Below, piece after piece: positions 46,339 through 48,396 of a stretch of 64,000 nt of DNA (the first letter of the stretch is position 1; every line of letters starts with the position of its first letter). The notes under the pieces were generated by a model. The model worked only from the letters and a program-made list of their open reading frames with translations, had not been told where the DNA came from and did not search any database. The translations under genes were made by a program, and so were the position numbers. The DNA is from Glycera tridactyla (Eukaryota): positions 84,196,001 through 84,260,000 of the forward strand of contig OZ286471.1 of the NCBI GenBank assembly GCA_965644265.1, in the 5' to 3' direction.

Positions 46339-46414
46339 ATGAGTTCCCAATTTGATCTCTCACTCGAAACTTCGGTTTTTGACGTGCTTCTGGAGGATGA
46401 TCTTGATGTACGAG
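46339..46414 (+). CDS. Predicted exon 1 of the Crypton tyrosine recombinase (MSSQFDLSLETSVFDVLLEDDLDVR-G)
   Basis: ATG at 46339 and donor CGAG|gtaaat (phase 1), matching the phase-1 acceptor ttccctcgtgtttttgcag|GC at 46612/46613. The downstream ORF has no ATG near its start. Confidence 0.75.
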
Positions 46415-46612
46415 GTAAATGCAATGGCCGAATAATAACAACGGTCGATTTTATTCGATTTTCGATTTTAAAAAAAATGCTATAACGATATGAATTGCAA
46501 GATTGCATGTCCCCGTGTCGTCTGTGTGACGTTCTCAGTGAAACCGGCCATGTTTTTGCCATGAAACAGCGATCAGAACAATAAATCAGTGCTTTCCCTC
46601 GTGTTTTTGCAG

Positions 46613-48396
46613 GCGCTGATGTAACCATTGCGTACGATGGTGAACATTTCGTCGTGGTAGATGTTGCCGAGGTAGAAGTGGTGGCTGAGACCGCTGAGAG
46701 CGAGGATAACGTCGGACGGCAGGCCGCAATGAGTGCTGAGCCGGTGCCCGGCCCCTCTGGTGAGGGACGGCACGCAACCCCTCTCCCCGCCCCAACCGAT
46801 CTCGAGGTAGAAGTTGTAGCTGACAGCGAGGAGAACGTGGGACGGCAGGCCGCAATGAAGGAGGTCCTGGTGCCGGGCCCCTCTGGTGATGGGTTGCACA
46901 CGGCCCCTCCCCCCGCAATAAACAATATGCACACAAACATTGCTGAGAGTGAACCAGTCCCTGGCCCGTCTAGCGAAGCCCAGCCATCCTCACGTGCAAC
47001 ACTCAGAGATTATATATCAAGGCAGGCAAACGCTAGCACCAAACGAAAGACAGACGCCACTGTCTTTAAATTTCGTACATGGCTGGCCAAGGAACATGGA
47101 CAAACCTGTAGTCTAATTAACATTGAACCTGAAAGTATGGACACATACATAGGGGCTTGGTTGTTGTCTTTGCGAAAAGAAGATGGAAGTGATTATGAGC
47201 CCGATACCTTAAGTTCTCACCACCGCTCCCTGTCCCGCTATTTGCGTGATGAGGGCTACCCAGTTTGTATAGTCAGAGACCAGAAGTTCAATACCAGCAG
47301 ACAGGTTTTGATGGCAAAAAGAAAACAACTTAAAAGCCAGGGTCTGGGGAATAAACCCAATCGTGCCTGCCCAGTTGATGATGTTTCTGTTGAGGTTTTG
47401 TGGGGGAGGGGAATTATGGGTCTACATTCTGCCGATGCATTGCTAAACATGATTTGGTTCCAAAACACGCAATTGCTTGGACTAAGGGGAAGCCATGAGT
47501 CACGCCAGATGTGCTGGGGTGACTTCAAATTAGAACAGGTTGTTAGTGAGAATGGAGACACGGAAGAGGTGTTGAGATGGCGAGAACGCCTTACTAAAAC
47601 AAGACAAGATGCCTCAAACACACGAGAATTCATACCCACTATATATGCAAATACAGCAAATGAGAGTCGTTGCATGATCAGAGCATACAAGTTGTTTAGA
47701 TCTCAAAGACCAGCCAATATGTTACAAGATACAGCACCATTTTACATTGCTATCAATTTCAATCTTTGTCCGAAATCCTACTCTACTGACAATCCCCAGC
47801 CTTTGTTTGATGAGCAGAAATGGTTCAAATCCCAACCCCTGGGCCAGCGTAGCTTAAGTTCCATGATGCGCCAGATGTGTGAAAAAGCTGACCTGCCTCA
47901 AACATTCACTAACCACAGTATCAGGAAGAGGGCAATTACGAAATTGCTTCACGAAGGAGTAGAGTCCAATAAAATCGCCCAATATAGTGGCCATCGGAAT
48001 GTTTCGTCCATTAATAGCTATGCAGTTGTTTCCGCCGGCCAGCAGAAAGGCATGTCCCACATTCTTCAGAACATACCGCGTACACAGTCAAAAACAACAA
48101 GAACGGGTACACATGCACTCACCTTGCCGGCGCCATCCACCACGACACATGCCTTGCCTGCACCGCCGTCACCTCCAATGAATGTTGCTCACGTACAACC
48201 TGTCAATATCCAACAACGCTCCCAGTCAGTATCCTCATCAGGTACAAATGTATCCGGCTTGTTTTCTAGTTCTACAATCCATGGTGGAACATTCCACATC
48301 CATGTTTCCGGGAGTAAATCGTCACAAGTAGCTGGAAATCAACCTGCTTCTGACACTGAATACACAAGCACGCCACGCGTGATCAATAGTGAGTGA
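46613..48396 (+). CDS. Crypton tyrosine recombinase (DUF3504/KIAA1958/ZMYM-related YR), exon 2; 619 aa after splicing
   Basis: Core-binding region (FRTWL...LRKEDGSDYEPDTL...LSRYL). Catalytic LGLRG (R), LTKTRQ (K), NHSIR (HxxR), SGHR (H), SINSY (Y). No stops or frameshifts. Confidence 0.92.
46669..46980 (+). repeat. 135-bp GC-rich coding repeat in the YR N-terminus (2 units plus a partial third)
   Basis: EVEVVA...SEDNVGRQAAM...PVPGPSGEG at 46669 and 46804; third EPVPGPS at ~46947-46970. Confidence 0.9.

What the first reader, a model, noticed from the sequence alone, without database searches (positions are those of the whole stretch)
46339..48396. Intact, intron-containing Crypton-type tyrosine recombinase gene not captured by the ORF track
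Seen: the 580-aa ORF begins at GTG behind a polypyrimidine-CAG acceptor. A 76-nt ATG exon with a phase-matched GT donor lies 198 nt upstream, giving 619 aa. R317, K354, H460, R463, H486 and Y495 (spliced numbering) are all present, and there is no lesion, unlike every other element here. Established: Cryptons are YR-only DNA transposons that can contain introns and are thought to move via circles; animal ZMYM2/3/4, QRICH1, KIAA1958 and KCTD1/15 derive from them; activity has rarely been shown. Inference: a young, potentially active eukaryotic site-specific recombinase.
Basis: partly seen in the sequence, partly recalled or inferred. Interest (0 to 1): 0.8.

Follow-up and report, generated by a model that had tools for sequence, protein, structure and literature searches.

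The report
Intact two-exon Crypton recombinase gene
This is an undamaged copy of a known kind of animal jumping gene (a Crypton) whose only protein, a Cre-like tyrosine recombinase, is read from a short first exon plus one long exon; it is a good candidate for activity tests but not a new kind of element.

Summary
A 580-codon open frame (46654-48396, +) matches Pfam DUF3504 and Phage_integrase. It has all six tyrosine-recombinase catalytic residues at the stated positions. It models as a two-domain Cre-like fold.

No RNA run could be listed, so splicing is untested at transcript level. Comparison supports the proposed 76-nt ATG exon and 198-nt phase-1 intron:
- Protein similarity to a relative starts exactly at the predicted acceptor, and that relative has its own acceptor at the same codon position.
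- The open frame has no ATG before that point.
- Five related loci have a short ATG exon, a strong GT donor and a 5' intron, four of them in phase 1.
About 5% of shuffles of the upstream DNA give an equally good exon.

The gene sits in a roughly 2.86-kb unit that ends in a 139-nt hairpin. A non-autonomous relative sharing both ends follows head to tail. This points to a transposon, not a domesticated gene.

"Young" rests only on the intact frame and undecayed CpG. "Active" is untested and copy number is unknown.

The scan has already noted Cryptons with introns and hairpin ends on other pieces of this genome. Verdict: new member of a known kind (CryptonA-like), of moderate interest.

The parts
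46032..46042 (+). Left-edge 11-mer ATTATCATCCG, the proposed left terminus of the autonomous element
   Evidence: This 11-mer occurs only twice in the 64-kb window, here and at 48878-48888. In both places the conserved block TACACCTCGGCGCT follows after 38 nt.
46043..46338 (+). 5' non-coding region: left-end blocks shared with the non-autonomous neighbour, and a possible promoter
   Evidence: 46081-46161 is 77% identical to 48927-49007. ATGCAAAT lies at 46235, CCAAT at 46255, a TATA-like site at 46261, and an 8-codon uORF starts at 46316 (read directly from the sequence). The promoter role is inference.
46339..46414 (+). Exon 1: ATG plus 25 codons and 1 nt, encoding an acidic N-terminal peptide, with donor GAG|GTAAAT
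   Evidence: It is the only ATG exon and donor passing my splice filters. 4.85% of 2000 dinucleotide-preserving shuffles give an equally good one. Analogous exons occur in L002, L003, L010, L011 and L012.
46415..46612 (+). Intron, 198 nt, phase 1, ending in a T-rich tract plus CAG
   Evidence: The relative L008 has an acceptor at the same codon position and L001 has a phase-1 acceptor. There is no transcript evidence.
46613..48396 (+). Exon 2: the rest of the 619-aa recombinase, including the stop codon
   Evidence: The first 16 residues after the acceptor align without gaps to the start of P0012, and 0 of 5000 shuffles score as well.
46693..46916 (+). In-frame 126-nt tandem duplication (81% identical) in a proline-rich linker predicted to be disordered
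   Evidence: family D2. pLDDT is below 50 for ORF residues 1-99.
46981..48087 (+). Folded Cre-like two-domain core (ORF residues about 110-478). Catalytic codons: R at 47485, K at 47596, H at 47914, R at 47923, H at 47992, Y at 48019
   Evidence: AlphaFold2 pLDDT is mostly above 90 in the core. Foldseek finds QRICH1 first and then Cre. VIA-align gives Cre Z 15-15.7 over 273-298 aligned residues. Pfam matches are and conservation.
48497..48526 (+). Two AATAAA signals, at 48497 and 48521, about 100-125 nt after the stop and upstream of the hairpin
   Evidence: read directly from the sequence. Their function is inferred.
48751..48889 (.). Right-end imperfect 139-nt hairpin. Its last 11 nt are the 11-mer that also starts the next element
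   Evidence: pair I1. The DNA fold is -56.7 kcal/mol with z -12.85. Hairpins sit in the same place in the relatives L002 and L005. By an ungapped scan, 7 of 35 loci have one against 0 of 35 coding controls.
48878..49812 (+). Adjacent head-to-tail non-autonomous relative with no recombinase gene. It has a similar left end, its own hairpin at 49640-49812 and an internal tandem repeat of about 190 nt
   Evidence: There is no tblastn match to the recombinase.

Best explanation
An autonomous Crypton DNA transposon of the animal (CryptonA-like, DUF3504-type) kind occupies about 46032-48889. It carries one undamaged gene of two exons.

Shown: splicing of a 198-nt phase-1 intron would join a 25-codon acidic first exon to a long exon. 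The result is a 619-aa protein with four parts:
- a disordered acidic and proline-rich N-terminus;
- a Cre-like two-domain tyrosine recombinase core with the full R-K-H-R-H-Y active site;
- a disordered spacer;
- a short conserved C-terminal motif.

Inferred from established tyrosine-recombinase chemistry and the Goodwin model for Cryptons: the protein binds sites at the element ends. It cuts and rejoins DNA through a 3'-phosphotyrosine link at Y495. The element is excised as a circle and put back by recombination between the joined ends and a short matching target.

The head-to-tail neighbour and the hairpin suggest that the closed end-to-end joint is the recombination substrate, because the base of the hairpin is completed by the next element's left end.

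Unspliced RNA would stop inside the intron after about 47 codons, so recombinase output should depend on splicing. That step is inference.
For: Gene identity:
- The ORF and the splice arithmetic check out.
- Pfam gives DUF3504 at 1.1e-21 and Phage_integrase at 6.3e-11.
- The catalytic residues are conserved in alignment A3.
- The spacings H-x-x-R, then 23 residues to H, then 9 to Y equal those of Cre H289, R292, W315 and Y324. The Cre numbering is from established knowledge.
- The model matches Cre at Z about 15 over both domains, and QRICH1 at Z 15.9.
- PDB sequence matches are QRICH1 and then XerA and Tn1549 Int.

Intron:
- Coding similarity begins at the acceptor, and L008 has an acceptor at the same codon position.
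- No ATG lies in the open frame before that point.
- L002, L003, L010, L011 and L012 have short ATG exons with 5' introns.
- Only one model in the window passes my splice filters, and about 5% of shuffles give an equally good exon.

Transposon context:
- Both ends are shared with a neighbour that lacks the gene.
- The hairpin has z -12.85, and hairpins recur in relatives.
- At least 107 related stretches occur in host-associated metagenomes, several per assembly.
- No other Pfam domain is fused to the protein.
- CpG observed/expected is 0.90 against 0.52-0.54 in the flanks.
Against: - No RNA evidence: no sequencing run could be listed.
- A profile of relatives' N-terminal acidic motifs did not pick out exon 1 among the six-frame fragments of the window. 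Exon 1 is therefore supported by gene structure, not by sequence homology.
- Only one copy of the gene lies in the window. Genome copy number is unknown.
- The closest database protein is 47% identical over most of the length, or 55% for a fragment.
- The neighbour's ends are only 75-78% identical, so it is not a recent derivative of this copy.
- The element boundaries rest on one internal comparison. No empty site was seen.
Confidence: 0.8

Rival explanations
1. Domesticated host gene: a Crypton-derived recombinase-like protein kept for a cellular role, like KIAA1958, ZMYM or QRICH1, and no longer mobile.
For: The 5' intron is conserved, which is a gene-like trait. There is one copy in the window. 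NCBI names some relatives 'KIAA1958-like' or 'ZMYM2-like/QRICH1 C-terminal domain'. The best PDB sequence match is QRICH1.
Against: All catalytic residues are kept, whereas domesticated DUF3504 proteins have lost most of the tetrad (PMC3212892). No host domain is fused. The gene lies between a left end and a hairpin that a neighbour without the gene also carries. Relatives are patchy, occur several per assembly and carry the same hairpin layout. The neighbourhood is rich in transposon fragments.
Confidence: 0.07
2. Single-exon gene: translation starts at the first in-frame ATG (46729, M65 of the spliced numbering), and the upstream 'exon' with its splice sites is a chance pattern.
For: There is no transcript evidence. 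About 5% of shuffled upstream sequences give an equally good ATG exon and donor. The motif profile does not single out exon 1. Some relatives (P0022, P0005, P0006) are intronless.
Against: Protein-level similarity to P0012 runs from the residue right after the acceptor, upstream of that ATG, and 0 of 5000 shuffles score as well. L008 has an acceptor at the same codon position. Several relatives have main frames with no ATG, preceded by T-rich tracts, and ATG mini-exons with strong donors.
Confidence: 0.12
3. Recently dead copy: the frame is still open, but the element can no longer move, for example through missense changes, damaged end sites or silencing.
For: Nothing here tests function. The neighbouring element is diverged, at 75-78% identity. 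No near-identical copy was found in any collection searched.
Against: Every invariant family position is kept. The 619-codon frame, the splice sites and the poly(A) signals are all intact. The CpG observed/expected ratio is undecayed relative to the flanks.
Confidence: 0.4
4. The recombinase belongs to a DIRS- or Ngaro-type retroelement, not to a Crypton.
For: A reverse-transcriptase fragment lies about 200 nt to the left, at 44905-45789.
Against: That fragment is on the opposite strand. It is broken and matches the reverse transcriptases of non-LTR elements. No reverse transcriptase lies on the + strand near the gene. The DUF3504 match at 1e-21 fits Cryptons, and DIRS and Ngaro recombinases do not match DUF3504 according to PMC3212892.
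Confidence: 0.01

Closest known systems
CryptonA elements of animals (Kojima and Jurka 2011, PMC3212892; for example Crypton-1_SP and CryptonA-1_OL); also Glomhoppers, the fungal CryptonA subfamily (PMC13465315)
   Same: The only gene is a tyrosine recombinase that matches DUF3504 and keeps the catalytic residues. There are no terminal inverted repeats and no long terminal repeats. Non-autonomous derivatives share both ends. Relatives are found in marine invertebrates.
   Different: Kojima and Jurka found no terminal repeats in animal Cryptons and describe no C-terminal domain. Here the right end is a 139-nt hairpin whose base is completed by the next element's left end. A short C-terminal motif is conserved. 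A 5' intron recurs in relatives, whereas no consistent intron positions were seen in Glomhoppers. Placement against Repbase references was not tested.
Cre recombinase of phage P1 (for example PDB 1crx, 5crx)
   Same: The two-domain fold matches at Z about 15 with 273-298 aligned residues. The R-K-H-R-(H/W)-Y active site has identical H-x-x-R, 23-residue and 9-residue spacings. The expected chemistry is a 3'-phosphotyrosine link and a Holliday-junction intermediate.
   Different: Sequence identity is only 13-16%. This protein has a long disordered N-terminus of about 150 residues and a C-terminal tail. H replaces W at the fifth position, as in Xer and lambda Int. The recombination site is unknown and does not obviously resemble loxP.
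QRICH1, ZMYM2/3/4, KIAA1958 and KCTD1 (domesticated DUF3504 genes)
   Same: They share the DUF3504 core. QRICH1 (9hjt) is the best solved relative by sequence (1e-23) and by fold (Z 15.9).
   Different: The QRICH1 match stops before the H-x-x-R...Y segment. According to PMC3212892 the domesticated genes lack most of the catalytic tetrad, are fused to host domains and are syntenic. Here the active site is complete and the gene has transposon ends.
CryptonF-1_cRei of Chlamydomonas (PMC9977147), the first Crypton seen to move
   Same: It is a transposon whose only gene is a tyrosine recombinase. It inserts at a short sequence that matches one terminus, and both excisions and copy gain were seen.
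   Different: It belongs to a different Crypton group (F). It has a 5-bp terminal/target motif (CACCG / CAYCG). Here the only overlap I can infer is 2 bp (AT), and no insertion or excision event has been observed.

Membership tests
Tyrosine recombinase superfamily | Catalytic residues R, K, H-x-x-R, H/W and the nucleophile Y in the conserved order | tested here: met
   R317, K354, H460, R463, H486 and Y495 are present. Five are invariant and H486 is conserved in at least 90% of 20 relatives. The H-x-x-R, GH and Y positions align to XerA.
Tyrosine recombinase superfamily | Profile match to the integrase catalytic domain above the curated cutoff | tested here: met
   Phage_integrase scores 42.8 bits against a cutoff of 27.1, E 6.3e-11.
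Tyrosine recombinase superfamily | Core-binding domain plus catalytic domain fold | tested here: met
   In the AlphaFold2 model, pLDDT is mostly above 90 in the core, residues about 110-478. Cre matches at Z 15-15.7 over model residues 111-450 or so. Foldseek probability is 1.00.
Tyrosine recombinase superfamily | DNA cleavage and strand exchange through a phosphotyrosine link | not testable with these tools
   Needs biochemistry.
Crypton (CryptonA-like) | The tyrosine recombinase is the only protein, with no reverse transcriptase or other enzyme on the same strand | tested here: met
   The unit at 46032-48889 has a single gene. The nearby reverse-transcriptase fragment is on the opposite strand and of the non-LTR type.
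Crypton (CryptonA-like) | The recombinase is related to DUF3504 | tested here: met
   DUF3504 scores 78 bits against a cutoff of 29.7. All 23 hits with a recorded Pfam annotation carry PF12012 and PF00589; the fragment P0012 has none on record.
Crypton (CryptonA-like) | No terminal inverted or long terminal repeats, and short direct repeats at the termini as recombination substrates | tested here: inconclusive
   No terminal inverted or long terminal repeats flank the unit. An 11-bp direct repeat marks both edges, but the right copy is also the start of the next element. The inferred overlap with the target is only 2 bp, and no empty site was seen.
Crypton (CryptonA-like) | A repeated, mobile unit with defined ends (several copies or non-autonomous derivatives) | tested here: inconclusive
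   One adjacent non-autonomous relative shares both ends at 75-78% identity. Genome copy number could not be measured.
Crypton (CryptonA-like) | Phylogenetic placement with reference CryptonA sequences rather than CryptonI, F or S | not tested
   Repbase references are not on hand. The assignment rests on the DUF3504 match, on the animal-associated sources of the closest relatives and the scan notes' word that the host is an animal, and on relatives from Ptychodera and Littorina.
Domesticated DUF3504 genes (ZMYM, QRICH1, KIAA1958, KCTD1) | Loss of most of the catalytic tetrad | tested here: not met
   The tetrad, the K and the H are all intact.
Domesticated DUF3504 genes (ZMYM, QRICH1, KIAA1958, KCTD1) | Fusion to host domains (MYM zinc fingers, BTB) and conserved synteny | tested here: not met
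   No other Pfam domain reaches its cutoff. Synteny cannot be tested here.
DIRS / Ngaro retroelements | Reverse transcriptase and RNase H encoded with the recombinase on one strand within split or inverted repeats | tested here: not met

The most novel reading that the evidence does not exclude
This is a currently mobile animal Crypton in which an old, conserved 5' intron acts as a splicing-dependent switch on recombinase production, comparable to intron retention in the P element. Its recombination substrate would be the long hairpin-forming joint that exists only when the right and left ends are joined, in a circle or a tandem. Both layouts would be undescribed for Cryptons.
Probability: 0.12. 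Interest if true: 0.65.

Novelty: new member of a known kind. Interest (0 to 1): 0.35.

Why it matters
Cryptons are the least understood class of eukaryotic DNA transposons. Movement has been observed only for CryptonF in Chlamydomonas. No animal Crypton recombinase, recombination site or intermediate has been characterised.

This locus offers all the parts needed for an excision and integration assay in one 3.8-kb stretch:
- an undamaged gene with a defensible exon-intron model;
- both element ends;
- a built-in end-to-end joint with a non-autonomous partner.

Such an assay could also yield a new eukaryotic site-specific recombinase tool. The recurrent 5' intron and the conserved C-terminal motif are modest additions to the published description of animal Cryptons. 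As a catalogue entry it is ordinary: intact CryptonA copies are already known from many marine invertebrates.

Tried and rejected
- RNA or DNA reads: the look-up of sequencing runs listed no run. Neither splicing nor copy number could be measured.
- N-terminal motif test: a profile built from seven relatives' acidic N-termini did not rank exon 1 among 2649 six-frame fragments of the window. The visual resemblance of the 'FDL'-type motifs is therefore not statistical evidence.
- Word search restricted to the N-terminal 125 residues: no hit. The length rule excludes the 325-aa fragment P0012, so this blank says little.
- Earlier findings looked up by sequence: blank.
- Insertion into the neighbouring LINE, which would have given an empty-site reconstruction: the LINE similarity covers only 44905-45789 and does not resume to the right of the Crypton pair.
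- Host identity: the best hit to a reverse-transcriptase ORF is 59% identical and unnamed. The host is unresolved. The closest Crypton relatives come from animal-associated metagenomes and an unnamed assembly.
- Rfam and tRNA scans of the window found nothing.
- The overlapping minus-strand ORFs at 46314-46940 lie in the G+C-rich repeated linker. I take them for by-products of composition.
- A full-text search found no paper that links Cryptons with hairpin or palindromic ends. The library is incomplete.
- The large representative protein search was not used. The family was already clear.
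Full report
**Observation.**
- The + strand carries a 580-codon open frame at 46654-48396, listed from a GTG.
- The frame stays open back to a stop at 46582-46584. It has no ATG until residue 26 of the ORF, at 46729.
- An ATG at 46339 opens a 76-nt stretch that ends GAG|GTAAAT. A T-rich tract ending in CAG precedes 46613.
- Joining 46339-46414 to 46613-48396 removes 198 nt in phase 1. The result is a 1860-nt CDS encoding 619 aa.
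- Only this one copy of the protein is detectable in the window.

**What the protein is.**
- Pfam gives DUF3504 (1.1e-21, 78 bits) and Phage_integrase (6.3e-11, 42.8 bits). Both are above their curated cutoffs.
- The word search found 24 relatives. All 23 with a recorded Pfam annotation carry both domains.
- The best full-length relative is 47% identical. A 325-aa fragment (P0012) is 55% identical.
- Named relatives come from Ptychodera flava and Littorina saxatilis.
- In a 20-sequence alignment, R278, K315, H421, R424 and Y456 are invariant and H447 is at least 90% conserved. These are ORF numbers; add 39 for spliced numbering.
- The spacings H-x-x-R, then 23 residues to H, then 9 to Y are those of Cre H289, R292, W315 and Y324 (Cre numbering from established knowledge).
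- An AlphaFold2 model built on that alignment is confident for residues about 110-478 and disordered at both ends.
- Foldseek ranks QRICH1 first and then dozens of Cre chains.
- VIA-align gives Cre Z 15-15.7 with 273-298 aligned residues spanning both domains, and QRICH1 Z 15.9 over the catalytic-type domain.
- By sequence, the best solved relatives are QRICH1 (1e-23), then XerA and Tn1549 Int. The QRICH1 match ends before the H-x-x-R...Y segment.
- So this is a complete, Cre-like tyrosine recombinase of the DUF3504 (Crypton) lineage.

**The intron.** No public run could be listed for this DNA, so there is no transcript evidence. The comparative evidence is good.
- The 16 residues right after the predicted acceptor align without gaps to the start of P0012, and 0 of 5000 shuffles score as well.
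- The contig of P0012 (L008) has its own T-rich tract plus TAG at the same position within the aligned Gly codon.
- The coding sequence therefore runs up to the acceptor. Because that frame has no ATG, an upstream exon is needed.
- Relatives L002 and L003 have main frames starting at GTG or TTG. Upstream they have ATG exons of 82 and 67 nt with donors GAG|GTAAGT and CAG|GTTAGT, and 480-nt phase-1 introns.
- L010 and L011 have phase-1 5' introns and L012 a phase-2 one.
- L001 shows a phase-1 acceptor at the contig edge.
- Many other relatives have ATG-less frames that begin with translated T-rich tracts.
- Other relatives (P0022 in L005, P0005, P0006) are intronless, with an acidic N-terminus continuous with the core.
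- 4.85% of 2000 dinucleotide-preserving shuffles of the upstream DNA give an equally good phase-matched ATG exon.
- A profile of relatives' N-terminal motifs did not single out exon 1. Its support is structural, not homology-based.
- I put the two-exon model at about 0.8. The main rival is a start at M65.

**Context: transposon or host gene.**
- The gene lies in a unit whose left edge carries the 11-mer ATTATCATCCG (46032-46042). Its right end is a 139-nt imperfect hairpin at 48751-48889, with a DNA fold of -56.7 kcal/mol and z -12.85.
- The 11-mer occurs only once more in the window, as the last 11 nt of that hairpin.
- From there a unit of about 0.93 kb with no recombinase gene begins. After the same 38-nt spacing it has the same TACACCTCGGCGCT block. 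Its left end is 77% similar and it has its own hairpin at 49640-49812.
- At its chromosomal right junction, that second hairpin lacks the final TATCATCC piece.
- The simplest reading is a head-to-tail pair of an autonomous and a non-autonomous element. The base of each hairpin is completed only when a right end meets a left end.
- A 2-bp AT overlap would reconcile the three junctions. Without an empty site this is inference.
- Hairpins 300-650 nt after the stop also occur in the distant relatives L002 and L005.
- An ungapped scan found strong hairpins in 7 of 35 loci and in 0 of 35 coding controls.
- At least 107 related stretches turned up in host-associated metagenomes, often several per assembly.
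- The neighbourhood consists of broken non-LTR reverse-transcriptase fragments. The nearest is on the opposite strand, which excludes a DIRS- or Ngaro-type unit.
- No host domain is fused to the recombinase.
- CpG observed/expected is 0.90 in the element and 1.05 in its neighbour, against 0.52-0.54 in the flanks. This fits recent arrival or lack of methylation, but it is weak evidence.
- Two AATAAA signals follow the stop and lie upstream of the hairpin.

**Mechanism.**
- Shown: an intact recombinase gene and candidate end sites.
- Inferred from tyrosine-recombinase chemistry and the Goodwin model as summarised in PMC3212892 and PMC9977147: the protein binds the ends and cleaves through Y495. 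The element is excised as a circle and integrated at a short matching target.
- The tandem pair is what integration of a circle next to a resident element's end would leave.
- Unspliced RNA would terminate in the intron, so output should depend on splicing. This is inference.

**Comparison with what is known.**
- Animal Cryptons (CryptonA and CryptonI) with DUF3504-type recombinases, non-autonomous derivatives and domesticated descendants were described in 2011 (PMC3212892). That paper reports no terminal repeats and no C-terminal domain.
- CryptonA diversity in oysters and acorn worms, and intron-bearing fungal relatives without consistent intron positions, are described in PMC13465315.
- This locus is therefore a new member of a known kind.
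- Three details go beyond the papers I could read: the recurrent 5' intron, a conserved C-terminal motif of the type G-L-F ... I-x-G-G-T-F, and the hairpin-forming joint.
- Some structural alignments place the C-terminal motif where Cre's C-terminal segment lies.
- The hairpin and the introns have already been noted by this scan on other pieces of the same genome.
- A library search found no paper linking Cryptons to hairpins.

**Limits.**
- 'Young' and 'active' are not established. Copy number, identity to other copies, insertion polymorphism, circles and enzyme activity are all untested.
- The host species is unresolved.
- The stretches of N in the window lie outside the finding, and I neither filled nor queried them.

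Noticed in passing
window 46032-46042 and 48878-48888: The 11-mer ATTATCATCCG occurs only at these two places in the window. It is both the last 11 nt of the right-end hairpin and the first 11 nt of each element's left end. The full hairpin therefore exists only at a right-end/left-end joint, as in a tandem or a circle. The three junctions fit a 2-bp AT overlap.
   Followed up: partly
window 48878-49812: This is a non-autonomous relative lying head to tail. Its left end and hairpin are 75-78% similar to those of the autonomous element. It has an internal tandem repeat of about 190 nt (49094-49281 and 49302-49490, 75% identical) and abuts a (TA)n run.
   Followed up: partly
window 48270-48315 (ORF residues about 540-555); alignment A3 columns 701-740: A short motif after the catalytic Tyr is conserved in most relatives (G-L/P-F ... 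I-x-G-G-T-F-x-I/V). No Pfam model covers it. Some structural alignments put it where Cre's C-terminal segment lies. Several relatives also end in a basic run followed by I-I-Y-x-S-D-S-D.
   Followed up: no
window 46693-46916: An in-frame 126-nt tandem duplication, 81% identical, encodes two copies of a proline-rich unit. A third partial P-V-P-G-P-S unit follows. AlphaFold2 predicts the region to be disordered.
   Followed up: no
window 46033-49814 compared with its flanks: CpG observed/expected is 0.90 in the autonomous unit and 1.05 in the non-autonomous unit, against 0.52-0.54 in the 6 kb on either side. G+C is 0.47-0.48 against 0.40.
   Followed up: no
window 46235-46342: An octamer-like ATGCAAAT lies at 46235, CCAAT at 46255 and a TATA-like site at 46261. 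An 8-codon uORF starts at ATG 46316, and its TGA stop overlaps the main ATG at 46339.
   Followed up: no
L002 2784-2957; L005 5865-6054; L035, L049, L081 and L028 downstream of the gene: Long imperfect hairpins lie 300-1000 nt after the recombinase stop in distant relatives (about 30-40% protein identity) from other assemblies. No such hairpin appears in the coding controls.
   Followed up: partly
window 386-2946, 14880-15425, 26452-27879, 44872-45828 (all - strand): There are several reverse-transcriptase (RVT_1) ORFs of the non-LTR type, mostly fragmentary. The one at 44905-45789 is split by a stop or frameshift and is cut off at its 5' end, about 200 nt to the left of the Crypton.
   Followed up: partly
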